From assembly GCA_028023455.1 (NCBI GenBank), contig JAQFVV010000001.1:3410001-3474000 (forward strand): a stretch of DNA of 64,000 nt. The letters run 5' to 3'. Source of the DNA: Epiperipatus broadwayi (Eukaryota > Animalia > Onychophora). The notes beneath the pieces were generated by a model. It made no database searches, had not been told where the DNA came from, and saw only the letters and a program-made list of their open reading frames with translations. Positions 25,232 to 55,422 of this stretch are shown here, in pieces; the stretch's first letter is position 1; every line of letters starts with the position of its first letter. The translations under genes were made by a program, and so were the position numbers.

Positions 25232-26036
25232 AATAAAAATGAACTGGATAAATATTTGTGTAAAGATGAAGTTATACATCTTCCACCTTGCCAAAAACCA
25301 CGTAGAGAAAGTGCATCTGTAATTGACGAATTTTTTGAAGAACAGAGTGGGACCACTTTAGCATTTAACCCAAAATATACAAGATATTTCCCTCCCCAGT
25401 ATCGTAATATAGACCATCTTCGAATGGGACTGAATCGTAATATGCCCATGTCTTTACAAAATCATAAACTTACTGCATTAATGGATGATGATGTTTTTGT
25501 TAAGCCAAATCCTGTGACTTCAAAACCTCTTTCAAATTCAACTAGCAATATTTGGGAAGATGTAACAGCTAGTATTAATAAAGTGGAATCTATGGATATA
25601 AGTCTTGATCCTATGCTAGTGACCAATATTAAAACTGAGCCTATGGACAAGGCAGCTTGTAGTTTTGCAGAAATGAAACTTGATAAATCTAAATCTTTAC
25701 AAGCTTCTCAGACTATTATTTCTCAACAGCAGCCTATTCTTCCTCCTGGTAGGACTATGTATACCTATGGGACTTTACAACAACCACCTCATCAACAATT
25801 CATGTTACCCAGGGGATATTTTCCTCCTACTCCACCTGATTCACAACCTAATAGTCCATCCACAGAATTTCCATTTACTCGAAGGACACCTCCTCCTCCT
25901 TATCCAGCATCTGTAACAATAAACAATACTGTTCCCAATTTGAATGGTGACTCCATGGACATAATGCCAATGAAATATAATAGACGAAATAATCCTGAGC
26001 TTGAAAAAAGGAGAATACATCATTGTGATTTTCCAG
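25232..26036 (+). CDS. KLF5: KLF5-like, coding exon 2 (transactivation/degron region and start of ZF1)
   Basis: Polypyrimidine tract + TAAG acceptor at 25231, then an 805-nt open frame NKNELDKYLCKDE...IKTEP...PPTPPDSQPNSP...TPPPPY...KYNRRNNPELEKRRIHHCDFP-G. CCAG|GTAATT donor, phase 1. YNRRxNPxLEKRRIH is the KLF5-subfamily pre-finger signature. Confidence 0.95.
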
Positions 26037-27245
26037 GTAATTATTTTTTGATAATTATATGGGCAGTACTAGTGAATTGTATTATTATATTTATTACATT
26101 TTAATTGTTCTTAAATAAAAAACAAAATATTGTAAAACTATTTTTCAATTATATCTGTAGTATAATAAATTCTTATTTGACATGCTTTTTCATAATTTCC
26201 CTGTGTTTTTCTAAATATTGGGTAAAGCTTTATCATTATTCCATCATATTCCTTATTGTAACAATTAGGAAAATTTAGTTCACTATTAATTACTACATTG
26301 AAGGGCTATATTTTACAGAGTTGTAATATTTATATATTTATTACATTATTTGCATCTTAGAGTATATAATAATAGAGTAATTTGAATTTTAAAAATGTTT
26401 TTTTTTTATCCAATCATAAAGCTGGCACATTCATAGCTAGAAGCTCAACTTTCTTGAAAAGTCTTTCGTTAAAAGTAGTTAAGAATTAAAAAAAAGTTTA
26501 ATATTTCATATAGTTATACTTTATTCATGAGAGATTGGGCTTACTTATTTGTTTTTTAAGCTATGTATATGGCACCAAATATATAAATGAGAAACAAATG
26601 GAAACCCTATAATAAAATTTATAAATGTATTCATTTCAAATATGTTTATGTAATATATTGTATAGTCTTATGTTCACATTTATGAGCACTTTGTATATAT
26701 TGTGTTTATATCACAAATCTTTGAATAAAAAATAATTTTTAGATACTCTATAACTGAATATATGATGTAGAGGAATGCTAGTTATGACATCATAGACCAT
26801 TTGGTTCTTGCCCTTCACAATAAAAAGAACCAAACTTCAAAATTTTAAAATAATAGTGGCATTAATAGTTATAAATATGTAGATAAGGAGTTGTAATTAT
26901 GATATTAAGTATACCCTTATGTATTTATTATGCATATTACCTTTTTTCACACTCAAAAAGGTTTTTTTTTTATTAATTTAAAAATAAGTTCTTTTACCTA
27001 AATATTTAAAAATAAGTAATTGAATTATTTAGTTATTTTTTTCTTGTAAATAGTTAGATCAGTTCTGCTTAAGATTTTAACTGAAATAATTAAAAACTTG
27101 TTCAGCAATATTTTTTCTAGAAAAGTTTTAATGGTAAAATATTAGTTTTTAAGGTAATGTCTGTATTTTTGTTATTAATTTCTTATAATTGTAAATTTTT
27201 TTTTTTTAATTCTTCATTTATTTACTTTATCATTTATTTTTTTAG

Positions 27246-27305
27246 GTTGTACAAAAGTTTATACAAAAAGTTCACATCTTAAAGCTCATCAGAGAATACA
27301 CACAG
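27246..27305 (+). CDS. KLF5: KLF5-like, coding exon 3 (ZF1: [21 protein letters not shown])
   Basis: T-tract + TTAG acceptor, 60 nt, G|GTAAAT donor, phases 1/1. Canonical KLF finger 1. Too short to appear in the ORF track. Confidence 0.97.
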
Positions 27306-28039: not shown

Positions 28040-28155
28040 AAGCCAATAAACATCACATGATCACCATTTCTTATGCTTGCTTATAACTGTTATTAAAACA
28101 GGCAAAACTCACTAGCTGTGAGTGGCAATACATATAGTGAGTTTTGCCTGTTTTA
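28040..28155 (-). mobile_element. Family A short copy (tail + ~20-bp arms) in KLF intron 3
   Basis: AAGCCAATAAACATCACATGA... tail, then TTAAAACAGGCAAAACTCACT...AGTGAGTTTTGCCTGTTTTA. Perfect 12-bp TSD ATGATTGGGTAT (28028-28039, 28156-28167). Confidence 0.85.
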
Positions 28156-30252: not shown

Positions 30253-30626
30253 AACATCACATGACCACCTCCTCTTATGCTTGTGTATAACTATTGTTAA
30301 AACAGGCAAAGCTCACTATATATATTGCCACACACAGCAAGCTAGAGTAATCAATGGATGCCAGAAGGTTTCTGGCTTATGGCCTTCGTCAGTGGGGAGC
30401 CTTGGATCTGAGAGCACTGCATCTAGATCTTAAGATCCTAAGATCTAGATGCAGTGCTCTCAGATCCAAGGCTCCTCACTGACGAAGACCATAAGCTAGA
30501 AACTAGTCTGGGGATATTGGATGAGTAGGCACTAGATGGGATTTTATGCACAAGCCTTCTGGCATCCATTGATTACTCTAGCTTGCTGTGTGTGGCAATA
30601 TATATAGTGAGCTTTGCCTGTTTTAA
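30253..30626 (-). mobile_element. Family A hairpin+tail element in KLF intron 3
   Basis: Tail on the left, inverted arms centred near 30435, 18-bp TSD TTTTAATTTTTCAAAGTA (30235-30252, 30621-30638). The left arm has an internal deletion that removes the cleavage site. Confidence 0.88.
30473..30514 (+). ncRNA. Family A hammerhead motif on the KLF pre-mRNA strand
   Basis: TCCTCA-CTGACGA-AGACCATAAGCTA-GAAAC-TA-GTC^TGGGGA. Stem I has 6 bp (one G-U); stem II is damaged. Confidence 0.6.
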
Positions 30627-33600
30627 TTTTTCAAAGTAGTTCAGAAATACTTGTAAGCCTTTTAACTTTTTCCATCACTTTTAAGTCAGCAAAAAAAAAT
30701 TGAGACAATTTTTTTTATTTGAGAGATTAAAAAAAAAAAATCATACAAAGCAAGATCAAACAAATATGACTGATAGATAAGCTGGATTAGGTTGAATTTA
30801 ATTAAAAAGTGTTTCACACTCAAGGTATTGAGAGATTACATTTTGTGGGAATGGAGCTTGCACTCTTTTCTTTGTCACCAAGCAGGATGTTTACCTTTTA
30901 CCACTTCACATAAATGTTTTGGAGCTTGCATATAATTTTTTGAACTAAATTTGAGGAAAAAATGCTGTTTGCGTCCCAAAAAAAAAGGGGGGGGGGTGAT
31001 TTTGGACTTCACTTGCGACTTTTCAGGGACATGATAAATTTAATATTTCAATTAAACCATTCATAAATTTGTGTTTTTATGATATCAGCTTTCTTGTAAT
31101 CTCCTTCAAGTATTACTTTTTTCATATTGTCAAACTTCCAGCTATTATAAAAAAATTGACAAAAGTGCAAAATACATTTTACAAAACAATGTGTTATGTG
31201 GCCCCATCATTTTACACGATGATATCATTTGACAGATTAACACAGAAGGGTTCCTGCAAGATATATGTAATAACATAAATATATACTACAACTAGGCATG
31301 CAAACCAAAGAACGATTCCAGTTATTTTTGGGTCACCCCCCCCCCCCCCCATATTTTATAAAATAAATGTAAAATAGTTGAATTTTACATTGAGCAATAT
31401 TTTTTTGATAAGATATTTAATATATATTACAAAACTGATTAATTTGACTTTTCTTATTAGAAGAATAAATTCTGCTATGGTTACTGTATATGAGTAAAGA
31501 GTTGACTTATAAAACTTTTAATACAAGAAAATAGTCTTTGGTTATTTTGATAAACTATTATTGCGTCACTGATATTCTTTTGGTTTTAAATAATTGAGTT
31601 TTTTAACTTATTGCTCAGATGATTTTATATAATAGTAGTCAATATATATCTAAAATATATTAATATTTTTTTTTTTACAAAAAAAAAGAAAAATTGTAAG
31701 AATGAAACTAAACACATAAATAGGATTTAATTTGCTTTATGGCTGATTTATAGCCTTATTATAATATTTTTTTTATATTTTTCATTTGTAATTAAATACT
31801 TTATTAAATTGCTGTAATATATTGACAATATTAACACATAATTAACATTATTCTTAAAGTACAAGTTTAAAAAAAATATTAATGATTTGCTTCTTTATTA
31901 CATCTTTTTATCTCCCAGTAGAATGATATACTAAATTTGAATAAGAAAGTTTGAATATGAATAATAATCTTGATTATCTGTATGTTTGAAATTATAATAG
32001 CATTAGAATTTGACCAGTGTTTAATTAAACTTTGCATTATTCCATTTTCATAGGCATAGAATGTAAACTTAATTTTATATAATTGAGTAGTTAAATAAAG
32101 TGTGATCTAATTAGAACATTTTTCTTTATTAAATTAAGACTTATATATAAATGCAAAAACATACACCAAATATTAGAACAACAGATATCTTTGTTTTGTA
32201 AAACTTGGTTGTCAATTTAGTGTGTGTATCTTTTTTAGCAGTAAAGATGTACATATTTTCTTTTTAAAGGTTTCTTAAAGATACATATAATAATTTTAGT
32301 CATGAGCCTTGAAAATTAAGTGAAAATGATAAAAGTTTAAATATTAAATTTTAATAAACAATTTAGTTTTATTTTTTTATATTTCTAATAATAAAAATGT
32401 TGCACATATTTTTGTTTAAAAATATTCTCCAGATCAAGGGTCTGCAACAGTTTAAATATGCCAACCAAAAAATTAAGGGAAGTAAAAAATAATGATGTCT
32501 GAGTGATTATAGTTTATATATGAACATTTATTTTAATGACAGAACATAACAGATTTAGCATAATATATAAAGAAAATAAATTCTTTTTTAAAAAAAAATT
32601 ACTTATGATATTAATGAGATTTCAAGGAATAATTTGAAATTTTAAGATCATATCATTAATCATTAATTTGGCTTCGTAATTTACTTTTTATAAATTCATA
32701 TTAAGATATATTTTTTATTAAATATAATAAATAACATGAAATAAAATAATAGTAATGAAATGAAAAGCCAATGAATTTTCACTATGAATTTATGAAAATA
32801 TCTGAGAACTACAGCTATTAACCTAAAAACTTGCTTATATGTAAAGTCAGCTAGTAGACTAGAGAGAGTGGGTTTATTATGCAGTGGCATTCAGACCACA
32901 GGAGCCAATAAAGAAAATATTTATTTGCAAATTACAAAAAAACAGTCTTTGTTTATCATTATAAAAAGAACTGCAAGCTTGGATCAAAGAGTCACATGTG
33001 ACTCATAGATTTATGACTCCTGTCCTAGATGCCTACATTGGAGTATCCATGAACCATAAAAACATTTTAGATTTTGGTTAATATTGTTGTAAAAAAAAAA
33101 AATTTCAAAGTGAAAATTGGGCAAAAGTGGTAGAAGTCAGTGAAAGTATTCTTATTTAAAAATATTCATCTAGATGTATATATTATAATAATTTTAGTCA
33201 TAAACCATAAAAGCAAAATTTAAAATTTATTAATGGTGATGTTGAAGCAAAAAATTATTTCAAAATAAAAGTTTAGTGAAAATGTCGGAAATTTAAGTGT
33301 TAAAATTTATTAATCAATTTAGTTTGTTTACATTTTTCTATCTCTAGGAATAAAATGTATGTATTTTTGTTATTCTTCTGCTTTCTGTCATAAAAACAGA
33401 TGTTGAAATCTGACAAATGTTGATGTCAAAAATTCAAAATGAAAATATTGTACAAGGAAAATAGTGGAAATTTGAGTGTGAATGTAGAAATGGTTACAAG
33501 AGACTATCCAAAATTCTTCAAAGCTTTCCAGTTTTTAGGAAAGCATCAGATATTTATAATCATGGTTTTTTTAAGTTTATTTGTGTATTTTTTGTCAATT

Positions 33601-36600
33601 TATTTCATAATTTTTAGCAGTTTTTTATCATTTCAATTTTTTTTGTACAGATATTAAGTCAAAATAATTAATCAGTCTTGAAATGAAAAAAATCTAAAAA
33701 AAAAATGTGTGATTAAATCAAAGTTCTACAATCTTTTTTTAAAAATGTCAAATTAAAAAATACCCAACTAGCAGAAAAGATTTTCAACTTAAGCAGTTTA
33801 TGTTGCAACATTACAGAATTAATGGAAATTTTTCCTAATGGGAATTAATCCGCAAAAAAAAAAATAATAGTATTATTGTGTAATTAATAGAAATTTTTGC
33901 TTATGTTGATTAATCAAAAGCAAATGGCAGTAACATTACAGAATTAATAATGTGGATTAATTAAAAGCAAATGGCAGATGAATAGCATCAATGAGGTAGT
34001 TATTTGTTAAAAGATCAAGTAATTTAAGAACTTTTTCTACATCTAATACAAGTGTTATTCCTACAAAAGAGTTTATTGTTAACAAAATACAATTCACTGA
34101 ATTCAAGAAAAAAAACTGGATTGCACTGCTAAGGCATGAGGAGGCTGCTAGCATAGATAACATTTTCTCACAAAAAATAGCAATTCTGAAATTGATCATG
34201 AATTTTTTGTTAGGATGTGTAAGATTGTTTTCATTTTAATTTTATACTTTTAAAAGACTAATTTAAAACTGACTGCAGTATGTACAGCAATTAACTATAT
34301 GTAATTTTTTGATTTTTTTTTCTGCTTAAAAGATTGGTTTGGGTGGTAACTTTGATTTAAGCAATGAACCTGTAGTGGATTATTTCTAAATGCATTTCAA
34401 TGTAAAGTACAACAAACTGAGATATAACATTTTATAATCAATTAATTTCTTATAGAAGACCCTATTCTAGCTAATAATTGATCAATAAAAAAAATAAAAA
34501 AACATATAAAACTAGATATTTCAAAAGATTTACTTCCTGTTTCATTTTAAATAATGGTTGAAATAAATATTTTAAGATAATATATAAAATAATGTATTCA
34601 TTTGTATAAAGTATAGTGATTAGTTTTTTGTTTGGGAAAAGGCTTTTTTTACTATTGTTCTTTAAAATTACTATAGCCATTAGAGAACTACCTTATATAT
34701 AAAATACATTTGTGTTAATAGATAGCTGAAAGTTGAATGCAAAGGAGTATATGTCTGTTTTTTAAATCTATGATAAGAAATCTCAGATTGACTTTAAAAA
34801 ATGTCTAACTATTTGTTTCATTAGGTAGACATGAATGCTCAAAACAGCTGAAGTGTATAATGACTGCATTCACTAAAAATGAAAGAACAAAACCTAGAAT
34901 CAGCTGTTGTTGAAAATAAATACTTATTGCAAGTGATTAATGGATATTATACTTTGTAATCAAAACCCAACCATAAGGAAGCAAATCACCGCAGAAATTA
35001 TCTGTCTCTGAATACTGTATTTATCGGAACATTTAATATCAAATTATCATTTCAAAACTATTCTTTAAATGATATGATTGCTACTTGAACCAAGAGGATT
35101 GATACAATAAAATTGAAGAGTGAATGACTTGAAATCTGTTAATTGGCCAAAAAAAAAAAATTAACTTTTTTCTAAGAATATATGTCATTTCTCTAAGACT
35201 TAATGACTTAGTATTTCTATAAACATTGTTCAAATATTTTCTAATTTCGTCTGCATAGAAAACAAACAATTCTTGATATGAATATTGAGCATTCATCATA
35301 TTAGTAAAATAATTACAGTATAGCCAAAGATAAGATGAAAACCTTTCCAAAGATTTGTTATAACAACAATATAGTAAATAAAATTACTCATTAGGTTTGC
35401 CACTTGTTGGGTGATCTTTGAGCATTTTTTTATTCTTGTTTTACTTTCTAATTAAGAATAAATAGATATCCATTTTCTGAGTAACTTTAGATTGTGTGAA
35501 TTGGCTAAGACAATCACTGGAAAGAAAAATGCTTAGCCGGAATACTTCAGATTTAAATCTGGACACATGAGGGAAATTTTTTTTCTTAGATTTAAAACTA
35601 GTAATAGCACTGGAAAGCTGATGAGCTAACGATTACACAAACAGATTTTATGAAAACAAGGTGCTAAATAAAAAGATGATATATGCTTGAATATATCAAA
35701 GCATGTATATCATGTTTTTCTCTTGGCAGGTTGAGATAATTAGGCAATTTATTGATTATCTATGATATTTTGTTGTGTTTGCAACATCATTAATACAATG
35801 TACCCTTACATTTCATTTTTTGAGGTTTTTTGTTTTGTTTTTTTACAGTGAAAGTAGCTCATAAAAAAAATGTGAAACTTGTATTTGTTTTAGAGACTTT
35901 GGAGTTTAAATTTGAGTAAATTTCAATACTAGATTCAAATTTTAATTAGGTTTTTTCATAGATTATTATATTGATTTTTTTTTTTTAATTATTTGTTATT
36001 ATTAATAGAATAACTATTTATCATCATCACACATCTTCAGGAAAACACGAATAAATAAATGTCTTTATGTATTAAATAAATTAATGAAAGAATTAAATAT
36101 CTTCATTTATTTTATAAATATTGCATAAAACTAATTTTATTTATTATATTATTTATGTTTAAATACTTTTTTAAATATTGTAAAATACCGTTTTAAATAA
36201 ATAGAAATTGGATTTGTGTCCAAATTCTTTCAATTTATTATTATTTTTAATTGATTTTCAAATAAGGAAAGTGGATTAAAAAAGAGCAGTTGATAGTCTG
36301 TTTAATAAATAGAACTGCTGTGCTCAAATGTTACCCTCCTAACCATCTAACATACAATATTATACAATAACCAATCAGTATTTGAAACAAATTGGTGTGA
36401 GTTTTGCACACAAATCCAATTAGCTTACCATAAAGCAAACATTTTATTGATTAAACCAATTGTTTGTGAACTTTTTTTTTTAAAAAAAGATATATTTAGT
36501 TTTTAACAACATAAATATATTAACATTTTTTTAGTCTTGTGCAATGATAAACTAATGGATTCATTAAAGTTATGTGCTTGAATATAATGTGCCTCCTATG

Positions 36601-37071
36601 CAATTACCTCTTCTATTATTATTACATATAAATTTATATTATGTCTTTTAGTCATTGTAAGAAAAAGTTTTTCAATTTATAGAGCTGGTAATATCTCAAG
36701 TTTTTTAAGATGGAGTCTGAACTAGCTTTTTCATGACCATTCCTTTATTATTTTAGAGCCTTGTAACTATTATTTATGTCCATTCTTTATGGTCTTGAAT
36801 CTTGTAGTAGTATTTTGTTGAGTATGTAAATTTCCTAATTGTTGCTGTTTTCACAATTATAATGAATTACTTACTGGAAAAATATTTTTGAGCTTTATTA
36901 ATCATAGTTCTTTGTCATCATTAAAGTTTAGAAATTATATTTTTTTCCTAACTAAGAAATAAAACTTGTTTTTGGCTCTATAAACTAAGAATTATTACAT
37001 TCTTTTATGTATCTATATATACAATATATATGTCAGAGAAAAATAATGTGAAGAAATGGGGGATATGTCAA

Positions 37072-37150
37072 GCATTGGTGGCCGAGTGGTCAGAACAGCT
37101 ACCTTACAAGCAATTGTCCCAGGTTTGCGAGTTTGCTTCCTGGCCAATGC
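37072..37150 (+). pseudogene. tRNA-derived retrocopy or short SINE (Gly-like acceptor stem, TAC anticodon loop)
   Basis: GCATTGG/CCAATGC acceptor stem, A-box-like TGGCCGAGTGG, CT-TAC-AA loop with a broken anticodon stem, CCAGG/CCTGG T-stem with an enlarged loop, A-tract at 37162-37173, and TSD-like AAATGGGGGATAT / AAATGGAGAATAT. Confidence 0.6.
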
Positions 37151-38346
37151 TTTGACACATGAAAAAAAAAAAAATGGAGAATATTTTTAAAAAAAAAGGT
37201 GTTTGATTCATCACAAATTCAAAATTTAAATGAACTAGCAGCAGAAGAGTATTAAAATTTATAATAATGTTTGGAATATAATTAAATCAGAATTTATCTC
37301 ATTTTCTATTGCTATACTTTTAACAATGATGTAAATCCATTGAAAGAACTCTCAACAGGATTTTCATTGAATCAATAGTTTCACTTGGAAATTTATATTT
37401 CTTTATTGACTTGCAATTATGCATTTATCCTTTTTTTGTTTATCCTAAATATTTATATACTGTATATATGTATATATTTAAAGAATATGTCTGCTGTAGC
37501 TATTTTATTAAATTTTTATATATAATTTGTGTATAAAAATCTGTTCTTATATAAAAGTGATCACAAAAATATATAAAATGTATATTTAGCGAAATGTTTA
37601 TTTTAATACAAATCTGCAAAATTTAATATTGATTCTTTATTTTTTTTATAATATAAATTCAATTGTAAAATTATGTTTTTTTTTTAATATTGTTTGTCTA
37701 AGCTTGGAAAGTGCCTCAATAGTTTAGTTCATTGCAAGAGTGATTGATGTGAGCGAAAAAAAAAGCTCATTTGAGTGGAACTTTTATACTCCACTTTGCT
37801 ACATTGGTGCTTCAGTGTCACTTAATATACCAAGCATATGAATGAATGTTGGAATGCCTGAAGAGAAAACTATGTGGAATAATTTATTATTCATTGGAGC
37901 TTGTATAAAATAGAAAAAAACAACTCAGTGTTAATATTAAAACCTAAAAACTTTTACAATCAAGTAAAACTTAAAATTTGAATAAAAAAAAGTAAAAAAT
38001 TTAATTTTCATTTCTTTCATCTTTCCCAATAATTATTTTTAAAGAAATAAAAATTTCAAAGTCATTGAAATAATCTTAAAAAAATATTTAGACTTAGCTG
38101 ATTTTTCTGATCTGTTAGTATTTACTCAAGTAACATTTGATTCTTTGCCTTCTTTCATTGATTATATCTTATTAAAATAAAAGTTTTTATTTGAAATGCA
38201 TTTGAAAATCAAATCTTTCTTTTCATATGTCAACATTGTACTTTGCTATTCATAAAGCTTTCCTCTTTATGAATGAAATTAGAAGTCTTTATTTAAATAT
38301 TTTTCATATTGACTTTTTTTTCAACTTTCAAATAACTTTCTGATTT

Positions 38347-39029
38347 AATACTAAATTATCTATGCTCTTTATTACTGTTTCACAATGTTTTTATTACAAA
38401 TCACTGACAGTTTCGATGCTCCAGCAATTTTCTTCAGAATGTAATTTCTGGAAGTTTTAAGTGATTTTACATGGATACAGGAAAATTGACGGCATGTGTG
38501 GATACGGCTGTTCAGTATATTGTTCCCGCCAGATTACCAGGAACAATAAATTATAATAATTATTCCTCTAAAGCAAACCTTTTTTGATTCATATTGGCAG
38601 TTTAAGAAAAATAAAGATAATAATAATTAATAAAATTTAAATAAAATATTCTATCCAAATCAAAATAGCTTCCAAGACTGTGTCTTGGTTATTTTCGTTT
38701 GGATAGAATAATATTTTTATTTAAATTTTATTAAGAATTATTAGCTTTATATTTTTCTTAAACTACCAGTATGAATCAAGGAAAATTTGCTTTAGCGGAA
38801 TAACTATTATAATTTATTGTTCCTGATTATCTGGCGGGAACAATATACTGAATAGCCATATCCACACGTGCCATCAATTTTCCTGTATCCATGTAAAATC
38901 ACTTAAAACTTTTCCCAGAAATTTCGTTATGAAGAAGGGTTGTAATAAAAACATTGTAACAGTAATAAAGAGCATAAATGATTTAGTATTGTATTATGGA
39001 TTTGACAATACAATAAGAAAGATAAAGTT
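38347..39029 (+). mobile_element. Family D long fold-back + tail element in KLF intron 3
   Basis: Arms of ~320 bp (38347-38678 and 38682-38990) closing on CCAAGAC-TGT-GTCTTGG. Putative tail at 38991-39029. Degenerate TSD ATAACTTTCTGATTTA / ATAACATTCAGATTTA. Confidence 0.8.
38402..38441 (-). ncRNA. Family D minimal hammerhead motif
   Basis: The minus strand reads CATT-CTGAAGA-AAATTGCTGGAGCATC-GAAAC-T-GTC^AGTG. Stem I has 4 bp; stem II is partly decayed. The equivalent segment of the right arm is deleted after TGAAGAAG. Confidence 0.65.
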
Positions 39030-40011
39030 ATAACATTCAGATTTATTGGAGTAAAATAGACAAATCAATTCTTTAAGTCAGAAAACAAGAACAGTAGAAT
39101 TAAAAAAGAATTTACATTAACAGAATTAAAATCAATCTGGTGAAAGACAATTAGAAAGTAGAGCTAGCAAATATTTGATCAAAGTATAGAAAACATTAGA
39201 CTTTTTTTTTTTTTGCATAAAATAAAAAATCAAATTGTGCAAAAATTTGCATTTGAAATGATTAACACTAAATTTTTAATTTAAATCTGAGGTTTTAGAT
39301 TTCAATTTAATTTTGAATAATTCATTTTTGAAATAAATAAATTTTACTGTATTTTACTTTTTCTTAGTAATTTGCATTCAGTGTTATAATGAATGTTGAA
39401 TGTAGATGTTGTGTCCTATTAATTAAAATAAGTTGGAGAACAATCTAGATTTATTATTAAGGATTCATTGCCTAATCTACAAAATTTTATCTATTATACT
39501 TTATAAATGTTTCAGTGATGTCTTTTAAGTAGATTTCTGTGATGTCTTTTTTATGATTTACATTTCAGGGTTTTGATAGACTTCATTCAAATCCTTAAGA
39601 GTTTTTTTTTTTGCCTAAGAACCATTGAAAAATAAATGTGTGGAGTAATTCTTGAAATATTGGATTATTTAGTCTTACTGTATAAGAAAATAAATTATTT
39701 AAAAATAGAAAAAAGAAAATACTGCTATATTTTTGCTTATTAAGAGAATATGATCACTCACTGCATACATATTAATTTATCAATGTAAATTAAAAGTATA
39801 TGCATATGAACATATAAATTAATAGTTACAAACATGTGTAAGTGGAATTAAGACTAAAATATAATTGAAGAGTAAAGATATTTTTATTCTACATTATACC
39901 AAATTATTGAACTTATGAGCATTTTTCTTCATTATTTATGTGTTATACTAATAAAAATTATGAATATATATATAAATTTATATACATGACTATAATGCCT
40001 TTAAGGATTAA

Positions 40012-40221
<210 letters not shown>

Positions 40222-40320
40222 CATTGTGGAAAAAATGCTAATCTCACTCTGATAATGACTCTTATTCTCATATATGTCATTAATACAGAAGGGAGACAAC
40301 AGAAACTTTCATCATTTCGT

Positions 40321-40538
40321 AATCACTGTGTTTTATTATGAATTATTTTATGTGCCAACAATAACGAAAAACTGTTGCCTTTTTCAAAAGATTAGAAGAA
40401 AAAAAACTTTCAAAAGAAATTAGCCATAAATCACTGTGTTTTATTAAAAATTATTTTATGTGCCAACAATAACGAAAAACTGTTGCCTTTTTCAAAAGAT
40501 TAGAAGAAGAAAAAACTTTCAAAAGAAATTAGCCATAA
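40321..40538 (+). repeat. ~108-bp tandem duplication in the proximal KLF 3' UTR
   Basis: The unit AATCACTGTGTTTTATTA...GAAATTAGCCATAA starts at 40321 and again at 40429, near-identical. Confidence 0.92.
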
Positions 40539-42033
40539 ACAATTAAACTATCTATTAAAGGTGGTGAAACATTAGGGGATGCAGGATTAGTCTGCAGATA
40601 AATGTGAATATGTAAATATATATATGCATATGTGTATGACTCATTAAGATGTTAGATATATATCTGATATATCCATTAGAAACCAGTCAACACTTAAACA
40701 ATCCCGATATAGAGAACAAACATTTTTGAAACTGTTGTCAAGGCAACCTCCTTTTAACAATATATGTATGTACACATATATCATTCATTGATATTGTGAT
40801 GAATTCTTTTTTGTCTAATAATTTTTATCATAGTTACCCAAGAATTTAGTTTTTTTTTCCTATAATACATTATTATACTATTTAAAAAAAGTTAAATTTG
40901 AGTTTAAATATTGATCACTTTAAAATGTGACTTCATTTTATTTTTATTAATTCCATAAATAGATGTAATTTTCATAAAGACACAACTCTTATAAAGAATT
41001 AACAGTTACTATAAAATAAAAGTTGAAAATAATTATGGATTTGCTCTGGATTAATTCTCCAAATTCCATAAGTGGAAAAAACATTTACATAAAAAATGAA
41101 CACAGAATAATTTTTTTTTTTAAATTTGAATTTTTGATATATGTATATATTTCCTGAGTATTAATAAAACATTTTATTTTATTACAATATTACTTTACAA
41201 GATCTAATAATAAGGACGTTAATACATAAAGTTTTTCACATGCACTAGTTTGATTATTCCTATATTAAAACTTCACATTAATAAGTTAAGTATCTATTGC
41301 ACTAATAATCATTTGCAGCATAATTGAATGCTAATTATTTTTTTTTTAAAAAAGGAAGGCAAAAACCAGTAATAAAAAATGCTAAAGTTCTCATTCAACT
41401 GTAGCAAAAATATTATAAGAAAAAAATGAAGTGAGTATGTGAATGTATTTTTTTTATATAAAGAATGTGGCTTTTCACAAAAAAAATTATGTATAATAAA
41501 ACTTAGTGAGGAACTATAATTTTCTATCCATAATCATAACTTTGTTAATGATATCCTGAGTAGTATTCATCAAGAATAACTTAAATAAATAGAAATGAAA
41601 AATAAAATGACTTTGAAAGATAGTTCACATAATAACATAATGCTATTATGTGGAATATTTTTCAGTCATTTTTTATATGTTCAAGTGACTTCATTTATTT
41701 TTATTTTTCTGTTCAGGAAAGTTATTCTTGATGAATACTACTCAGCATATCATTAACAAAATTATGATTATGGATAGAAAATTTTCTCTAGAGCATTTTG
41801 ATATAGTTCTTCACTAGATTTTATTATACATTTTTTTTTTTTGTGAGATGCTATATTAAAAAAATATGTTTACAAAATGCTCACTTCATTTTTTTTTCTT
41901 ATAATATTTTGGTTACATTTGAACAAAACTTTTAGCATTTTTTATTACTGGTTTTTGTCTTCCTTTTTTTAAAAAAAACAAACAAAATTAATTCACATTC
42001 TATTATGCTGCAAATTATTATTATGCAGTAGAC

Positions 42034-42489
42034 CAGTGGTCTTCAACCACCGGTGCAGAAGTTTTTTTGTTGGTCCATGCTAGACTGGCAAAAAAGTTTG
42101 TAATAACAAAATAATATTTTAATCTTTTAATTAATATAAACAATTTTTATTTATTTTTTCATCACACTTTTACCTGATTAAAAAAAAAAGAAACAGAACA
42201 AAAACAAAATCTAATCAATCATATATAAATTAATTTGTTTTTCTAGTTATCACGATATTTATGGGGGGGGGGGGATAGAATTAAATCTTTTATTACTTTT
42301 CTAAAAAAAGTTCAAAATTAAAAAAAAAAAAGTTTTTTATTATACATACTTTATATATGTATATAACTTCATCTAAAGCTAAGCTGTTTACATCTTTAAG
42401 AAAATTTATCTATAGACTTTTGTTGGTCCGCGCGAAACCTTATTCTTATTTTTATCGGTCCGCAGGTGTGAAAAGGTTGAAGACCACTG
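42034..42489. mobile_element. hAT-superfamily (Charlie-like) MITE
   Basis: TIR CAGTGGTCTTCAACC / GGTTGAAGACCACTG and a perfect 8-bp TSD CAGTAGAC (42026-42033, 42490-42497). No ORF. Confidence 0.9.
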
Positions 42490-45400
42490 CAGTAGACACA
42501 TAACTTATTAATGTGAAGTTTTAATATATGAGTAATCAAACTAGTGCATGTATAAAACTTCATGCATTGAAGCTCTTATTATAAAGTTCAGTTAGATCTT
42601 GTAAAGTAATACTATAATAAAATAAGTCACATCTGTCTGAGGATTTAAGTTTCATTTTAAAGTAAGCAATATTTAAACTTAAATTTAACTTCTTTTTTTT
42701 AAATAATATAATAATGCATTATAAAAGGGGGGGGGGCAAAAAAAGAATACTAAATTCATGGATAACTATGGTAAAAATTATTATATAAAAAAAAAATGAA
42801 AATTTTTCTTTGGAAAGTTTTACTCTGATAAGTTAAAATAGAATTCATCACGATGTCTAATGAGTGATATGTGTGTACATACATATATAACATATATTAA
42901 TATCTTAATGAGTCATACATACACGTATATTGCCCATCCCCTGGTGTTTCACCACCTTTAATAGATGATTTAATTGTTTATGGCTAATTTCTTTTGAAAG
43001 TTTTTTTTTTCTTCTAATATTTTGAAAAAGGCAACAGTGATTACTAAATGATGAAAGTTTCTGATGTCTCCATTTTTCTGTATTAATGAAATATGTAGTA
43101 ATACATATTCATGTCTGTGTAATGAAGAGACGTGTATGCATATCTCCATTTGTTGAAACTTTAAAACAAGAAAACTGTGATGCTTCTTGTGAGCTGTACA
43201 TTCAAAACCATGAAGAATATTAGTTTTAAGAAGTTAAATAGCCATTCCATTATGAAGTACAAAAATTTTCCCGTATTGGGTCCAATATTTAATAAAATAA
43301 ACACCAGAATTATTTTTTTAAATTTGTATATTGTGTATTATATAGAAAAGATATCTGGTGAAGAAATGTAAAGTACAAAAAATAAAATAGTCTAAATGGC
43401 TAAAGCAGCTGTAAATAATTATAATATGTACAGTTATATTTTTATATTATATAATAAGAGCATTTATAAACTGAATTGTAATCAGCAACTTATTTCTGTA
43501 GATAGAAATATTTTGGCAGCCTTAAGCCCTCCAAAGTGTACAAAGTTTTTAATTTGTATAAATAAAGAAAAAAAAATATGAAAAAAATTATATGTATGAA
43601 TATATATATATGCATATATATATATATTTGTTGACCGTAATGGGATCAGTGGGATAATGCTGGGAGATAGAGTTGGATTGCTATGTGGTTGTATTTTATA
43701 AGGCCTACTTTTTTTGTTTGTAAATTTTTTTGGTTAAATATATATAAAAGGTCTAATGTTAAAAGTACAAAGCTAGATATACGAAAGAACCAATAATGAT
43801 TTAATAAATCACTTTTTTAATATTTATTTTGTTTTCATTTATTGTTATTTAACTAATGTTATAACAAGATATCTTGACTAAATGAGAGTTTATTTGGTAA
43901 AACATTAATTAAAGCAAAGACATATTAAATAGTATTAATGCAGCATTTTGTATAAAAAAAATATTGTTTTATTGCTTTTAGAAGAATTTACCAGATAAAA
44001 ATGAGACCAAAATACAATTGTGTGAAAATTCAGACATACCTGGGATGAGAAACAGAAATTATTATTGTTCTATCCGCAAATACTTGGGGAGAAGGGAATT
44101 AAAAAAAAAATATTTAGGTTATTATAAAAAGTATAGGTTGATTTTTCTGAAATATTTTAATGTTAGACATATTTTGGAAGTTGAAAAGGGAGACAAAACT
44201 CAGGTTTTATATATTTTAAATATCTTGTGCCATTTGATTATATAATGAAAGGATTAATCTGCCTGATCATGTTCATATTATTGGTGGTAGCAATCATTTT
44301 AATTAAAATTTCTCAGATCATGCATGTTATGTAAGTAAAATAAACTCTTTATGTTTTTGATATAATCCTACAAAATATTTGTCAGTATTTAATCATAAAA
44401 GACACTTTTATTTATGTCTTCTGATATTCTTTTTACTACAGTAATTAATTCTTAAGTAGGATATTTTTTATATTGGAACAATGCAGTGCCTTTCTGTAAA
44501 AGCTAAACTGTAACATCGACCATTCTGTTACTATATTTACCGATGGCATATTCAAATCATTTCAATTAAAAAAAAGGCCAGTTATTACTAACTTATCTAC
44601 TTATGAACTTTAAGCCAAACATACCAACATATTGCAAGGCTTTCATATTTTGTTAATATATCTTTTGCGAAATTTGTATAAGTTGATTGTGAAATCACCT
44701 AATTATTGCAATCATATCAAAAATAATAGATGAACGTGTGTAAAGTTACTTTCTGATATGCATTGACTATTCAAGTTCTAAAGGAGTGAGTATGATATAT
44801 AAATGTTGAAAGACATAAGATTGTAAGCGATATTATAAATGTTAATCACTTATTAAACAAGTTGATGAATTACAGTTGTGAGATGCTTTAATACGAAGAA
44901 AAACATCACAAGAACTTCAACTGATATACCATTTAACATGAAAATTGACATTTGATTTAGTTATGTAAGTAAAGTATGTATGGAACAAGTTAATATAACA
45001 ACTGATCTTAACATCCATTCAATGAAAATATTGAATGGGGGAGGGGGATTCAAAAGTTAAAATAATTGCAAGAATTAAGATTAATATTTAGAAGGATTAA
45101 GTGTAATGAACTCTAAATAATTGAAAGATTAAGAATCTATTTATTCACTTCGGTTTTATAATCCAATGAATATGAGGTTTCTATATCAATTTCTACAAGC
45201 TGAAAAACATTAGTTCTATAATCTGACTCAATTTCTCAGAATTTTATGAAGCATTCTTAAATGAATGTACAATGGAGGACAGAACATGTGTATAATGAAT
45301 TTGATAGAATACTGGCCCTATAAACAGTATAACTAATTTATTATGAAACATGTATCAAAAGCTTATTGAAGTTTTTATTTTATTATCCAAATTTATCTTT

Positions 45401-46399
45401 TTATTCAAAAAGCTAACAAGATATTCAATTCACTAGTAGAGTAATGTAAGTAATAAAAAAAGATTCAATCTAACTAAAAGAAATTGTTCAATATTGAATT
45501 ATTTATAGATCATCATCTTAACAATTAGATACCATTTTATTGCTACAAAATTTTCTATTAATTGAGTTAAAGGACTAAAGCAATATATTTAAATATATTT
45601 TACATTATGATAATGCTATCCATTCATAAAGTTCTTTGCTATAATTGATAATATTCAACAATAATTATTGCAGTTTTCCATCTTTATATCAATTTAAACA
45701 TCCTTAAGATCTAAGGACAATTTTATGAATATATGTATTTTTTAAAAAAAATCAATCTGAAGCTGCTATCAGATTTTAAAACTATCAGAACTTGCAGCCA
45801 TATTTTAAGATGACAAATTGCTGTTTTAACTTCATTAAGCTGAATATTTTTGTCCAAATCTAAATGAGTAGATATAATTCATATATGAATTTGTGTAATA
45901 TTATTCAAAATGATCAAAATATTAGGGTTTAAATAAATGTAATAGGATTATGATGTTATTAATCCATACATTAGTTTGTCTCAAAAATTTAAAACAATCA
46001 TAATAAACAAACGATATTTCCCCTCAATTTTTAGTAGATCAATTATTTTTGTCTTTCTGTCAGTCACAGCTGATTTTTAATTCTATAAAATTTCGCACTC
46101 ATTTTGGTAATCGGACAATTCCGATCATTCACTCAAAATATATTCTCATTCTTAAAGTAGTAGTTAGTTGTCTTAAATGAATTAGACTTCTATAGACATC
46201 AACAATTTGTTTTAATAAGTTTGAAAATTTATATTGGCAATTTTAGCAATTAATAACTATAAATATCACAAATGACTTGCTTCTGAAGAGGAGGTGTACT
46301 TTTTTCAATATGTTTGGAAAAGAATTACTCGTTAAATCTGATATTTTAACCTTTGTAAATAATTGATTATTTATCCAACAATTAGCCTGTAAATGCTTG

Positions 46400-47210: not shown

Positions 47211-49247
47211 TCATCATCATCAATCCACTGCAGGGTGGTCTCCAAGTTCAATCCATCTTTTCCTATCTTTAGCTTCTCTTCTCCACAGCACCCCTGCACA
47301 CTTTTCTTATTTCATCCATCCATCTCACATGTGATATCTTTCTGGGTCCTTTACAATCTCTTGGAATCCAGTTTAAAATTTCAATTGTCCATCTGTTATC
47401 ATCTCTTTTAACAATATGTCCAGCCCAACTCCACTTCAGTCTTTTAATTTTTTCAATGAGGTCAGTAACACCTGTTTGTTCTCTTTCCCATACATTGCAT
47501 TTTCGATCCCTTCTTGTTACTCCCAACAAGCATTTCTCCTTACTTCTTTGAGTGGTCTGAAGTCTCTGTATTGCTCTTCTATTAAGTGTCCAAGTCTCAG
47601 ATCCATAAGTAAGAACTGGCAAAACACATTTATTAAAAACCTTCCTTTTCAAACACATAGGCATATTTCCTTTTAGTATCAAGTTATTTCTACCAAAAGC
47701 ACTCCAAGTTTAATTCTATGATTAATTTCATCCATTATATTTCCATCTGTATTAATAATCTGACCAAGGTATTTGTAACTGTTAACTTCTAACTCCTCAT
47801 AATCAATCTTTATTTTCATATTTTGAGAAAATCTATTAAACATTACTTTAGTCTTTTTAACATTTATCTTTAGTCCTACTTTCATCTGATAACTCTATCA
47901 ACATTTCCTATAGCTCTAAAGCATTATTTGCAAAAACAACTACATCATCTGCAAAATCTAAATGACTTAAATAATTTCCATTTACTTCAACCCCTTTATC
48001 TTCCCATTTTAATCCACAAAATACTTCTTGCAGCACTGCTGTAAAAAGTTATGGAGTCACCCTGTCTTACATCCTTTTTAATGTTGATCTTCTTACTATC
48101 ATTATGTAATCTAATAGTTGCTGTTGCATTTTTATAAATATTCTTCAAAATATGACAATATCCTGGATCTACACCTTGATGATCCAATGCTTTAATCACT
48201 GAAAAAATGTTTATAGAATCAAATGCCTTTCATAGTCTACAAATCCTAAGCATAATGGCAACTCATATTCATTTGTCCTTTCTATATTTTCTCTCAATAC
48301 CTGGATATGATCTACTGTACTAAAACCACTTTTAAATCCAGCTTGTTCTCTTGGTTGGTGGAAATCCACTGTTTTCTGTAGACGAGTTGTAATTATCTTA
48401 GTAAAAATTTTGTATAAAACTGATAAAAGACTGATAGGTCTGTAATTTCTAATATCTTCTTTATCACCTTTTTTAAATATTAATACTGCATTCTTCCAAT
48501 CACCTGGTACATCTTTATCATTTAGACATTTGGTATATAACTTTGCTAAAAAAAATTTCTATTTCTTCACCTGCTTCTTTTAATATATCCAATTACAATT
48601 CCATCATTACCTGGAGCCTTCCCTTTCTTCATAAATTTAATTGCATGTCTCACTTCCTCATTCAAAATTCTGGGCAATTCAGAAGATATAATATGTATAG
48701 GAGGCACTTGTTCTTTATTACTATATAATTCTTGATAGAAGTCTTATACACATTTTATGATGTCATCTCTCTTTTTAGTAATAATGCCATCTTTTTTTTT
48801 TATTACAGATATAAATTTCCTACCAATACCAAAATGTTGTTTTACACTCTTTAGACTTTTATTTTCTTCTACAGCTTTCCTTGCTAGTTCACAGTTATAC
48901 TTTTTTATATCAATTTCAACTCTTTTCCACACCATTTTACAAAATTCGAGATATTCAATCTTTTTTAATGCATCATTGTTGTATATCCTCATATTCCTTC
49001 TTTTCTTCATAAATTCTCTAGTCTCAGTAGAAATTTTATTGGTCAATTGCTGCTTTTTTCTACCAGCTATCTTTGTTGCAGTTTTTAAAAGTGTATCGCT
49101 TATTTTTCTATTAATGTCATTCAAATCTGAATCATGTTCAAAATCTACTAATACTTGAAACCGATTTGTAAGTTCTAATTTAAATTCATTAGAATGTTTT
49201 TGAAGATTAGGAATATCAACTGTAAATATTGTTTTTATAACTTTTGG
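47211..49247 (-). mobile_element. RTE-clade LINE copy 2 (same family as copy 1)
   Basis: ORF-track peptides CVLPVLTYGSETW, LKWSWAGH, YKYLGQ, VRQGDSI. High nucleotide similarity to 4560-6733, and an (ATC)n tail at 47211-47221. It lacks the U2 insert, which shows the empty site TACTAAAAAGAGAGATGACATCATAAAATG. Confidence 0.95.
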
Positions 49248-53984: not shown

Positions 53985-54125
53985 AACGAATACACTTGAC
54001 CAAACATATGTAAAAGGATACATGATCCCTAATATATGCATTTCATGCAAAACCAGAACTCGGCTGTTAGGGCAGATCATATTCTCCCACATGCATATAC
54101 AATCAGTGCTTGGTATATATTAAGA
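53985..54125 (-). repeat. Family B fragment with a decayed HHR
   Basis: The reverse complement AGCACTGATTGTATATGCATGTGGGAGAATATGATCTGCCCTAAC...GCATGAAATGCATATATTAGGGATCATG matches 59145-59230 and 3415-3480. Confidence 0.6.
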
Positions 54126-55422
54126 TAGCATTGGCTCAAACTTTAATTCACAGGCTTTAATCTTTTCATGCTTTCAACTATTCAACCATTCATTTAATTG
54201 AAAAACCAATGATGGAATGCTCAAAGCTCTTATTGGATTTGATATTGAAGTCATACTCATAGAGATTTTACCGCCCTTATAAAAAGTTGTTAGATGAAGA
54301 AAGATAAATTTAGCATATATTTCAGTAAAAGACAAATGATATTATAAATGAACATGATACTTAGTCATATTAAGTTTAGCTTGTCTGTACTCACTAGTCA
54401 TAACATCATATGAAAATAAATATATCTTATTTAAAATAAATTTACATTAGAATTTTGCTGTAGAAGTATTTATTCTTTTTATTGCTGTTCAACCAAGATT
54501 AGAAAATGAATAGAAGTTTGAATACATTTTTAAAACAATAAATACTACATTAAAGGAATTTTAATCTGTGTCAAAGAAATTATAGTAACAATTTATAAAA
54601 TATGCATCAAAAGCATCTATGAAGCTTTTTTTTTTTTTTGCAGTATTCTTTGTCAATATTAGTTTACTTTAAAAAAAAAAGACAAAAAGAGGAAAATGGT
54701 AAAGAAATAACATCTAAGATAAAATATATATAAATATACAATTGGTTGCTAGAATTATATCTGATATTAATATTTGTTGAAATAGGGTAGTTGTTATTGC
54801 ATGATTCTATAACATTTTGAATGATTTATTGTACTTAGATTTGGATCATATTATAATTAGGAAAATAAAATAAAAGTTTTAATACAAATGACCAAATGAC
54901 AGAATTTTTCAAATCACTAGATAAATTAGATTAGATATTGCCTATTATTTTATTTTTAGTTTTTTTGCTGATCTGATGAATTTTATTTTTTTTTATAAAA
55001 TGCTTTTAAATAATGCCATAGAACAACATAATTTATGGGAAATTTTTTTTTTTAGATTAAGAAGAAAATATCTGATCTGAAATTCATGACTAAGTTGATT
55101 TTCATTGAAATGGAATCATGTTATCTTATGTATGATAATGTTAAAATATTCTTTGCAATAAATAAATTGATTAGTAACTGAATATATAAAATTATTTTTT
55201 ATGTTAAAAAATGACTGAAAATATTTTTTCAGCTATTTGTTACATTTTATTCCAAAAACCATTGTAAATTAAGTTAATGAAAAGAGAGAATATTTGGGTC
55301 TACCCTAGTTTTAACCTAAAATACTTCCAACTGTGGGAAGAGACACTCTATCTGCCCATTATAAACTAAATTAAGTTAATGATAAAACTATAGGTTATCA
55401 GAAACAAAACAAACAGCATGAA

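What the first reader, a model, noticed from the sequence alone, without database searches (positions are those of the whole stretch)
40269..43095. KLF5-like 3' region is a ~2.8-kb palindrome starting ~50 nt after the stop codon
Seen: six colinear inverted blocks centred near 41640. By eye, the inner pair 41521-41582/41718-41780 has 2 mismatches in 62 nt, and 40479-40581/42935-43038 has ~6 in ~103, several of them G-U compatible on the + strand RNA. No TSD, HHR or TIR hallmarks were found, so this looks like an inverted duplication of 3'-UTR-type sequence rather than a TE. AATAAA signals at 41015 and 41163 lie in the left arm. Inference: proximal polyadenylation would give a hairpin-free mRNA, while readthrough would give a >1-kb dsRNA stem (ADAR editing, nuclear retention or hpRNA/endo-siRNA production that could silence the short isoform). 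That would be an alternative-polyadenylation dsRNA switch on a master transcription factor.
Basis: partly seen in the sequence, partly recalled or inferred. Interest (0 to 1): 0.75.

Follow-up and report, generated by a model that had tools for sequence, protein, structure and literature searches.

The report
Old one-off palindrome beside KLF5-like gene
A real 2.8-kb mirror-image duplication of non-coding DNA starts about 50 bases after the end of a KLF5-like gene in a very AT-rich, repeat-rich animal genome, but it looks like an old, decaying one-off copying accident, and nothing in the sequence shows that it acts as an RNA switch.

Summary
Eight colinear inverted blocks run from 40272/43094 to an apex at 41639 (9-nt loop). 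The palindrome starts 51-56 nt after the TGA stop (40219-40221) of a KLF5-type zinc-finger gene.

The arms are 90% identical over 829 aligned columns. Each arm has private changes: a 456-nt MITE with an 8-bp target duplication, a ~110-nt repeat, a 108-nt tandem duplication and a ~220-nt deletion. It is therefore old and not an assembly artefact. The backbone, the last exon and the downstream flank occur only at this locus in the 5.6-Gb assembly. It has no significant target-site duplication and no hammerhead, unlike this genome's abundant fold-back families. The "inverted duplication, not TE" reading is supported.

The proposed polyadenylation/dsRNA switch is not supported by the sequence:
- Mismatches show no + strand G-U bias (31 vs 22, p=0.27; 29 are transversions).
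- The minus strand folds almost as well.
- AATAAA occurs about 3.5 times per kb on both strands, and both cited signals lie in a repeat copy.

If read through, the RNA would form a long interrupted hairpin (helices up to 39 bp), but transcription is untested. The mechanism class is already known (inverted Alus and alternative polyadenylation). The scan earlier found a similar one-off 8.6-kb palindrome elsewhere in this genome (s1-085779). The contig is not human.

The parts
25256..26086 (+). Large coding exon of the KLF5-like gene (approximate ends; open frame)
   Evidence: ORF. Best database relatives are arthropod and vertebrate proteins named Krueppel-like factor 5, at most 39% identity.
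27236..27298 (+). Middle exon with zinc finger 1 (approximate ends)
   Evidence: Six-frame scan finds the [21 protein letters not shown] motif on the + strand at about 27272.
40034..40221 (+). Last exon of the KLF5-like gene (zinc fingers 2-3), stop TGA 40219-40221
   Evidence: Two Pfam zf-C2H2 matches. Best single-stretch PDB match is KLF5 2ebt, 121.9 bits, against about 105 for KLF4. Splice acceptor AG at 40032-33 and the stop checked. Single copy in the genome.
40222..40271 (+). Unduplicated 3' spacer between the stop codon and the palindrome
   Evidence: The arm alignment does not extend left of 40272.
40272..41638 (.). Left arm of the palindrome (1367 nt including private insertions)
40321..40539 (.). 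108-nt tandem duplication private to the left arm, units 96% alike
   Evidence: TRF. The right arm holds one unit.
40653..40762 (.). About 110-nt dispersed repeat (family A) inserted in the left arm only
   Evidence: Many genomic copies at 79-91%, 89% to L005, 3 copies in the 260-kb local sample. The right arm is uninterrupted here.
40923..41208 (.). Dispersed repeat copy (family B) that predates the duplication; holds the AATAAA hexamers at 41015 and 41163
   Evidence: Copies at 70-78% elsewhere. Its last 34 nt (41174-41207) are also in the right arm at 42592-42625, 94%, so the right arm lost about 220 nt of it.
41626..41652 (.). Apex: 9-bp perfect stem around a 9-nt loop, centre 41639
41640..43094 (.). 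Right arm of the palindrome (1455 nt including the MITE)
42026..42497 (.). 456-nt MITE (42034-42489) with 15-nt terminal inverted repeats, flanked by the 8-bp target-site duplication CAGTAGAC; right arm only
   Evidence: 3623 candidate copies, the 39 non-self copies scored are 88-94% identical. Ends and duplication read. The left arm has the unoccupied site at about 41291-41300.
42796..42839 (.). 44 nt private to the right arm
   Evidence: Gap between blocks; sequence.

Best explanation
This is a one-off, locus-specific inverted (fold-back) duplication of roughly 1.1-1.4 kb of non-coding DNA lying just downstream of a KLF5-like gene. Shown: the two arms meet at a 9-nt apex, exist nowhere else in the genome, differ by about 10% (K2P 0.107), and have each collected private changes since the duplication. 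Those changes are a MITE with its own 8-bp target duplication, a short dispersed repeat, a tandem duplication and a deletion. Inferred: the duplication arose by a replication or repair error in which a DNA end folded back on a short inverted repeat (or the polymerase switched template strands) and then returned to the original template at a short AT-rich microhomology. It has since decayed as neutral DNA. If KLF5-like transcripts read through it, they would fold into a long, much interrupted hairpin. Nothing in the sequence indicates that such a hairpin has been kept by selection or that it works as a regulated switch.
For: Real and highly non-random; MFE -1037.6 against about -515 kcal/mol for shuffles. 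Single locus: the backbone pieces 40230-40600 and 41174-41640 match only themselves and the opposite arm; 40770-40935 also gives two weak hits (73-79%) to an old repeat fragment at about 40850-40924 that both arms share. The backbone has zero hits in 260 kb of local background, while repeat family A has 3. Old and genuine: 90.1% identity over 829 columns, 53 transitions and 29 transversions. MITE with TSD in one arm and an empty site in the other. Family A in the left arm only. 108-nt tandem duplication at 96%. Apex symmetric to within 9 nt, as expected for fold-back priming. No sign of selection on an RNA hairpin: 31 vs 22 G-U-type mismatches on + and -, p=0.27, and + and - strand MFE within 2%. 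Poly(A) hexamers at background: AATAAA 3.5/kb on + and 3.9/kb on - across the window. Palindromes are commonplace in this genome: about 4 fold-backs of 0.5-1.4 kb in 200 kb of random sample, and 335 scan notes mention palindromes, among them a one-off 8.6-kb palindrome (unchecked AI notes). Fold-back formation of inverted duplications is an established mechanism (PMC3907307, PMC7467729; titles and abstracts seen).
Against: No transcript, small-RNA or editing data were available, so a function of the hairpin cannot be excluded. The position, starting about 50 nt after the stop codon of a transcription-factor gene, is suggestive. Helices of 39, 35, 32 and 30 bp without interruption would be long enough for dsRNA-binding enzymes. 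The G-U test has modest power with 53 transitions. No related genome was available to date the event or to test conservation. The junction microhomology (ATAT) is not significant in 25% GC DNA, so the formation mechanism is inferred, not shown.
Confidence: 0.72

Rival explanations
1. The palindrome lies inside the KLF5-like 3' UTR. Proximal polyadenylation gives a hairpin-free mRNA, and read-through gives a >1-kb imperfect dsRNA stem that is edited, retained in the nucleus or diced, so that poly(A) site choice tunes KLF5-like output.
For: The palindrome starts 51-56 nt after the stop codon. The + strand RNA is predicted to fold arm on arm, with 776 of 1083 pairs joining the arms and helices up to 39 bp. 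Poly(A)-type hexamers exist in the left arm. No other gene was seen between the palindrome and about 47.2 kb. The mechanism class exists: alternative polyadenylation decides whether inverted Alus are included in human 3' UTRs, e.g. MDM2 (bioRxiv 10.1101/2023.11.30.569399).
Against: No strand-specific preservation of pairing and no + over - folding advantage beyond 2%. About a third of the mismatches are transversions. The arms have accepted a 456-nt MITE, a 110-nt repeat, a tandem duplication and a 220-nt deletion. AATAAA is at background density, and the two cited sites lie in a dispersed-repeat copy. No transcription evidence of any kind.
Confidence: 0.1
2. A mobile-element insertion: either a fold-back or long-TIR DNA transposon, or a Penelope-type head-to-head retro-insertion of the kind that is abundant in this genome, whose family has otherwise died out.
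For: This genome is full of fold-back insertions. The L030 family has 2790 candidates at 87-98% identity, mostly 94-98%. Scan notes describe Penelope-type head-to-head insertions with 8-15-bp TSDs (unchecked AI notes). A 5-bp direct repeat ATATG sits at both outer ends. A Penelope-like GIY-YIG ORF and a hammerhead note lie in the same window.
Against: No second copy of the backbone in 5.6 Gb, although the search reports matches down to 70% identity, and none in the local sample. The 5-bp repeat is matched or exceeded by 10% of random site pairs, and no 8-15-bp TSD exists. No hammerhead core or Rfam hit. The arms are symmetric to the apex, not one full and one truncated copy.
Confidence: 0.1
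3. An independent hairpin-RNA (hpRNA-type) gene with its own promoter that yields endo-siRNAs, unrelated to KLF5-like 3'-end choice.
For: The inverted-repeat architecture resembles Drosophila hpRNA loci, which are Dicer-2-dependent inverted repeats often homologous to their targets (PMC10317233). Helices reach up to 39 bp.
Against: hpRNA arms are typically near-perfect, whereas these are 90% identical and broken by large insertions. The arms are homologous to nothing else in the genome, so there is no trans target. No expression data.
Confidence: 0.05
4. An assembly fold-back artefact (chimeric long read).
For: Palindromes with tiny loops are a known product of library chimeras (own knowledge).
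Against: Artefactual arms would be nearly identical. These differ at 82 of 829 aligned sites and by five large arm-specific insertions or deletions, including a MITE with its own target duplication.
Confidence: 0.02

Closest known systems
Fold-back (inverted) duplications / DNA palindromes formed by hairpin priming or template switching (PMC3907307 in humans; PMC7467729 in yeast)
   Same: Two adjacent inverted copies of local, unique sequence with a very short spacer centred on a short inverted repeat. Short microhomology (ATAT) at the outer junction. One-off event, no mobile-element hallmarks.
   Different: Those cases are large (kb to Mb), usually recent, and often linked to terminal deletions or dicentrics. 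This one is small (about 1.1-1.4 kb per arm when formed), interstitial, fixed in the assembly and old (10% arm divergence). The mechanism here is inferred from anatomy only.
Inverted Alu repeats in human 3' UTRs governed by alternative polyadenylation (bioRxiv 10.1101/2023.11.30.569399; review PMC11263572)
   Same: An inverted repeat placed downstream of a stop codon that could form intramolecular dsRNA only in the long 3' UTR isoform.
   Different: Inverted Alus arise from two independent insertions of a high-copy SINE, with arms of about 300 nt. Here the arms are a single-copy local duplication of more than 1 kb. Transcription, dsRNA formation, editing and isoform use are shown for inverted Alus and are entirely untested here.
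Drosophila hpRNA loci producing endo-siRNAs (PMC10317233)
   Same: Long inverted repeat that would fold into a hairpin transcript. hpRNAs commonly derive from duplicated pieces of the gene they regulate.
   Different: hpRNA arms are near-perfect and yield Dicer-2-dependent siRNAs against coding sequence of a target in trans. Here the arms are 90% identical, interrupted by transposons, non-coding, and have no other homologue in the genome.
Penelope-type head-to-head retroelement insertions and fold-back repeat families of this same genome (scan notes s1-085670, s1-177661; L030 family)
   Same: Palindromic layout with a short apex, in the same genome.
   Different: Those are high-copy, carry hammerhead motifs, and are flanked by 8-15-bp target duplications, often with a one-sided tail. 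The KLF5-adjacent palindrome is single-copy, has no hammerhead and no significant target duplication.

Membership tests
Local fold-back inverted duplication (DNA palindrome) | Two adjacent copies in inverted orientation with a short or absent spacer | tested here: met
   Eight colinear inverted blocks from 40272/43094 to a 9-nt loop at 41635-41643.
Local fold-back inverted duplication (DNA palindrome) | Duplicated sequence is local and unique, not a dispersed family | tested here: met
   The backbone matches only itself and the opposite arm in 5.6 Gb, apart from one old repeat fragment shared by both arms. No hits in 260 kb of local sample.
Local fold-back inverted duplication (DNA palindrome) | Microhomology or a short inverted repeat at the junctions | tested here: inconclusive
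   A 9-bp inverted repeat at the apex and ATAT at the outer junction, but such matches are common in 25% GC DNA (10% of random site pairs).
Fold-back / long-TIR DNA transposon or MITE | Several copies in the genome sharing termini | tested here: not met
   no further copy. By contrast the embedded MITE has 3623 candidates.
Fold-back / long-TIR DNA transposon or MITE | Target-site duplication flanking the element | tested here: not met
   Best direct repeat is 5 bp (ATATG), reached by 10% of random site pairs.
Penelope-type head-to-head retro-insertion | 8-15-bp target duplication around the whole hairpin, hammerhead motif, high copy number | tested here: not met
   No such TSD and no CUGANGA...GAAA core, no Rfam hammerhead at E<=1, single copy. 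The defining features are taken from scan notes and were not re-derived here.
3'-UTR inverted-repeat dsRNA element controlled by alternative polyadenylation (inverted-Alu type) | Both arms lie within a transcribed 3' UTR isoform | not testable with these tools
   No transcript data. The species' own protein was not in the protein database (best hit 39%), so no cDNA contig could be traced.
3'-UTR inverted-repeat dsRNA element controlled by alternative polyadenylation (inverted-Alu type) | The arms can pair into long intramolecular dsRNA | tested here: met
   In silico only: 776 arm-to-arm pairs, helices of 39, 35, 32 and 30 bp, MFE -1037.6 against about -515 for shuffles.
3'-UTR inverted-repeat dsRNA element controlled by alternative polyadenylation (inverted-Alu type) | Proximal and distal poly(A) sites that exclude or include the repeat | tested here: inconclusive
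   Hexamers are present but at background density (AATAAA 3.5/kb on +, 3.9/kb on -). Those at 41015 and 41163 are inside a dispersed-repeat copy.
hpRNA / endo-siRNA locus | Dicer-dependent 21-22-nt small RNAs from a near-perfect long hairpin | not testable with these tools
   No small-RNA data. The arms are only 90% identical and are interrupted.
KLF5 subfamily of Krueppel-like factors (the neighbouring gene) | Three C-terminal C2H2 fingers with KLF linkers, and closest relatives named KLF5 | tested here: met
   Finger 1 exon at about 27272. Fingers 2-3 in the last exon. Best single-stretch PDB match is KLF5 2ebt. Many relatives of the big exon are named Krueppel-like factor 5 by their sources.

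The most novel reading that the evidence does not exclude
The KLF5-like gene makes a long 3' UTR isoform that contains both arms. The resulting >1-kb imperfect hairpin is diced or edited, and its products act back on the left-arm sequence present in all isoforms. This would be an hpRNA born in cis from its own target's 3' UTR, giving a self-limiting loop on a developmental transcription factor in a non-model invertebrate.
Probability: 0.07. Interest if true: 0.55.

Novelty: new member of a known kind. Interest (0 to 1): 0.17.

Why it matters
As it stands, this is a clean, datable example of a small interstitial fold-back duplication that survived in a germline. It lies in a genome where nearly all other palindromes are mobile elements, so it is a useful negative control for separating one-off palindromes from fold-back retroelements there. 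It would matter more only if transcripts were shown to run through it. In that case a transcription-factor gene would carry a home-made long dsRNA in its 3' UTR. Even then the principle, that poly(A) site choice includes or excludes a 3'-UTR inverted repeat, is already described for human inverted Alus.

Tried and rejected
1. Empty-site test. I looked for other copies of the KLF5-like locus to compare the spacing between stop codon and downstream flank. The big exon has partial copies on C12855 (91%), C6230 (78%) and C6204 (90 nt). The last exon and the flank 43095-44700 are single-copy, so no comparator exists.

2. Orthologous loci. The closest proteins in the 5.8-billion-protein set are only 39% identical, too distant for any 3'-flank comparison. 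The species itself seems absent, so no cDNA contig could be traced.

3. A second large protein search with the 61-aa last exon, to fish for short transcript contigs, was not run. The operators flagged the search as costly, and the first search made success unlikely.

4. Rfam on 38000-46000 gave only a chance mir-297 hit (27.5 bits against a gathering score of 90) in TA/TG-rich sequence.

5. Species identity. My guess of a velvet worm, from the 5.6-Gb size, could not be confirmed. The paper look-up gave no GC content or matching assembly statistics, so I leave the organism as a panarthropod-like invertebrate. It is not human (about 25% GC; best hits are arthropods).

6. Three parallel contig sets. 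The idea that G000 holds three parallel contig sets (C1, C6197 and C12393 are all about 35.2-35.5 Mb) did not help, because this locus is present once.

7. First global alignment. It used cheap gap extension and mis-threaded the insert regions. I replaced it with block-wise BLAST and alignment.

8. MITE-end alignment. One alignment of MITE ends used wrong locus offsets. It showed only that other copies also end at ...CCACTG.

Full report
WHAT IS THERE

The window is very AT-rich (22-31% GC in every 2-kb bin). It comes from a 5.6-Gb assembly. It is not human, and I treated it as an invertebrate contig.

A KLF-type gene lies on the + strand, with three recognisable coding pieces:
- A large exon at about 25256-26086.
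- A small exon with zinc finger 1 near 27272.
- A last exon at 40034-40221 with fingers 2 and 3, ending in TGA at 40219-40221.

The last exon's best single-stretch match among solved structures is KLF5 (2ebt, 121.9 bits, against about 105 for KLF4). Many relatives of the large exon are named Krueppel-like factor 5 by their sources. The closest are a centipede, a scorpion and horseshoe crabs, at only 37-39% identity. "KLF5-like" is therefore a fair label. I searched the exons one by one by reference and did not build or search a joined model.

THE OBSERVATION

It is confirmed. The repeat finder and BLAST of the left half against the right half give eight colinear inverted blocks, from 40272/43094 inward to 41638/41640. 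The apex is a perfect 9-bp stem (41626-41634/41644-41652) around a 9-nt loop, with the centre at 41639. The palindrome starts 51-56 nt after the stop codon. Chance is excluded, with BLAST E-values down to 7e-74. The folding energy is twice that of shuffled sequence, at -1037.6 against about -515 kcal/mol.

ANATOMY AND AGE

Over 829 aligned columns the arms are 90.1% identical, with 53 transitions and 29 transversions. The K2P distance is 0.107, or about 0.05 per arm. Each arm has private changes:
- Right arm: a 456-nt MITE (42034-42489) with 15-nt terminal inverted repeats and a perfect 8-bp target-site duplication, CAGTAGAC. The left arm keeps the unoccupied site. This MITE family has at least 3623 candidate copies, and those scored are 88-94% identical.
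- Left arm: a ~110-nt dispersed repeat at 40653-40762, absent from the right arm.
- Left arm: a 108-nt tandem duplication at 40321-40539 whose units are 96% alike, so it is younger than the arm split.
- Right arm: a deletion of about 220 nt. A second dispersed repeat (family B, about 40923-41208) was already present before the duplication, because its last 34 nt are in both arms. The right arm has lost most of it.
- Right arm: 44 private nt at 42796-42839.

This pattern rules out an assembly fold-back artefact and shows an old germline event.

IS IT A MOBILE ELEMENT?

Once the embedded repeats are set aside, the backbone is unique. The pieces 40230-40600 and 41174-41640 match only themselves and the opposite arm in the whole assembly. 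The piece 40770-40935 gives in addition two weak hits (73-79%) to an old repeat fragment at about 40850-40924 that both arms share. The search tool reports hits down to about 70% identity.

Because that tool skips very common words, I cross-checked by BLAST against 260 kb of local background, made of the rest of the window plus 20 random 10-kb samples. The backbone pieces gave no hit, while family A gave three.

The best direct repeat at the outer ends is 5 bp (ATATG). Ten percent of random site pairs in this window do as well. There is no hammerhead core on either strand and no Rfam family beyond one chance hit.

Fold-backs are otherwise common here:
- About four of 0.5-1.4 kb occur in 200 kb of random sample.
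- The largest of these belongs to a family with 2790 candidates, mostly at 94-98% identity.
- The scan's own notes, which are unchecked AI notes, list 335 palindrome notes in this genome.
- Many of those notes were read as Penelope-type head-to-head retro-insertions with 8-15-bp target duplications and hammerheads.

The KLF5-adjacent palindrome meets none of those criteria. The same kind of object has therefore been seen before on other DNA of this genome.

HOW IT MOST LIKELY AROSE (INFERRED)

The likely cause is a replication or repair error. A free 3' end folded back on the short inverted repeat now at the apex, or the polymerase switched strands there. It copied about 1.1-1.4 kb back toward the gene, and then returned to the downstream template at an AT-rich microhomology (ATAT at 43090-43094). 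Fold-back formation of inverted duplications is established in humans and yeast (PMC3907307, PMC7467729). The junction evidence here is weak because such short matches are common in this composition.

DOES IT WORK AS AN RNA SWITCH?

I ran four tests that the sequence allows.

1. Strand-specific selection. If the + strand RNA hairpin were maintained, transition mismatches should favour G-U on the + strand. They do not: 31 are G-U on + and 22 on - (binomial p=0.27). A further 29 mismatches are transversions that break pairing on either strand.

2. Folding. The minus strand folds almost as well as the plus strand, at -1015.8 against -1037.6 kcal/mol.

3. Poly(A) signals. AATAAA occurs 225 times on the + strand and 247 times on the - strand of the window, about 3.5-3.9 per kb. 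The left arm has six where about five are expected.

4. Integrity. The arms have tolerated a MITE, a dispersed repeat, a tandem duplication and a deletion.

None of this shows that the region is untranscribed. If read through, the RNA is predicted to pair arm on arm (776 of 1083 pairs), with uninterrupted helices of 39, 35, 32, 30, 28 and 27 bp. By general knowledge of ADAR and Dicer substrates that is long enough for dsRNA-binding enzymes. The switch is therefore possible but unsupported, and the sequence looks like neutral decay.

COMPARISON WITH KNOWN SYSTEMS

Structurally it is a small, old, interstitial member of the class of fold-back inverted duplications. It also resembles Drosophila hpRNA loci (PMC10317233). 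It differs from those in three ways: the arms are imperfect, they are interrupted, and they have no other homologue in the genome. Even if the switch were real, it would be a new instance of a known principle.

WHAT COULD NOT BE DONE

- No transcript, small-RNA or editing data are reachable with these tools.
- No close relative's genome is available, since the best protein identity is 39%.
- The locus has no paralogous copy of its 3' end for an empty-site test.
- A second large protein search for short cDNA contigs was left out on grounds of cost and low expected yield.

VERDICT

The "inverted duplication, not a transposon or an artefact" reading is supported. The "alternative-polyadenylation dsRNA switch" is unsupported speculation. 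The object is ordinary for this palindrome-rich genome, and interest is low unless expression data show read-through.

Noticed in passing
window 42026-42497; copies in L012-L016: A 456-nt MITE with 15-nt terminal inverted repeats (starting CAGTGGTCTTCAACC) and an 8-bp target duplication, a length typical of hAT-type elements (own knowledge). At least 3623 candidate copies in the genome; those scored are 88-94% identical.
   Followed up: partly
L030:4579-5945 (G000:C5:1004579-1005945): A young, high-copy family (2790 candidates, mostly 94-98% identical) built of roughly 340-nt units arranged both in tandem and inverted, giving 1.4-kb fold-backs. It is a different kind of palindrome from the KLF5-adjacent one.
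   Followed up: partly
G000:C12855:212798-213585, G000:C6230:6705767-6706173, G000:C6204:4676237-4676326: Partial copies of the large KLF5-like exon (91%, 78%, and 90% over 90 nt) with no matching last exon anywhere. They may be gene fragments or pseudogenes.
   Followed up: no
window 55836-58002 (and 53993-54217 / 59038-59263): A 201-aa ORF with a GIY-YIG nuclease domain (56136-56741, minus strand, Pfam E=7e-7). It sits between 195-nt inverted repeats that are 95% alike, nested in an older inverted pair (73%). It looks like a Penelope-like element remnant in a fold-back setting.
   Followed up: no
window 6080-6418 (+) and 47269-47682 (-): Two ORF fragments share a nearly identical peptide stretch (ILKGN.PMCLKRKVFNKCVLPV.TYGSETWTLNRRAIQRLQTTQRS), so they are copies of one retrotransposon family. 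Pfam gave no hit for the second at E<=0.01.
   Followed up: no
G000 contigs C1, C6197, C12393: The contigs that I take to head three runs of contig numbers have almost the same length (35.48, 35.37 and 35.19 Mb), as if the assembly held three parallel sets. Yet the KLF5-like 3' end is present only once. Unexplained.
   Followed up: partly
window 27300-40033: The intron before the last KLF5-like exon is about 12.7 kb, in keeping with a giant, repeat-rich genome.
   Followed up: no
window 40653-40762: A ~110-nt dispersed repeat (family A). It accounts for most of the 855 first-look candidates and has 3 copies in a 260-kb sample. Its type (SINE or MITE) was not determined.
   Followed up: partly
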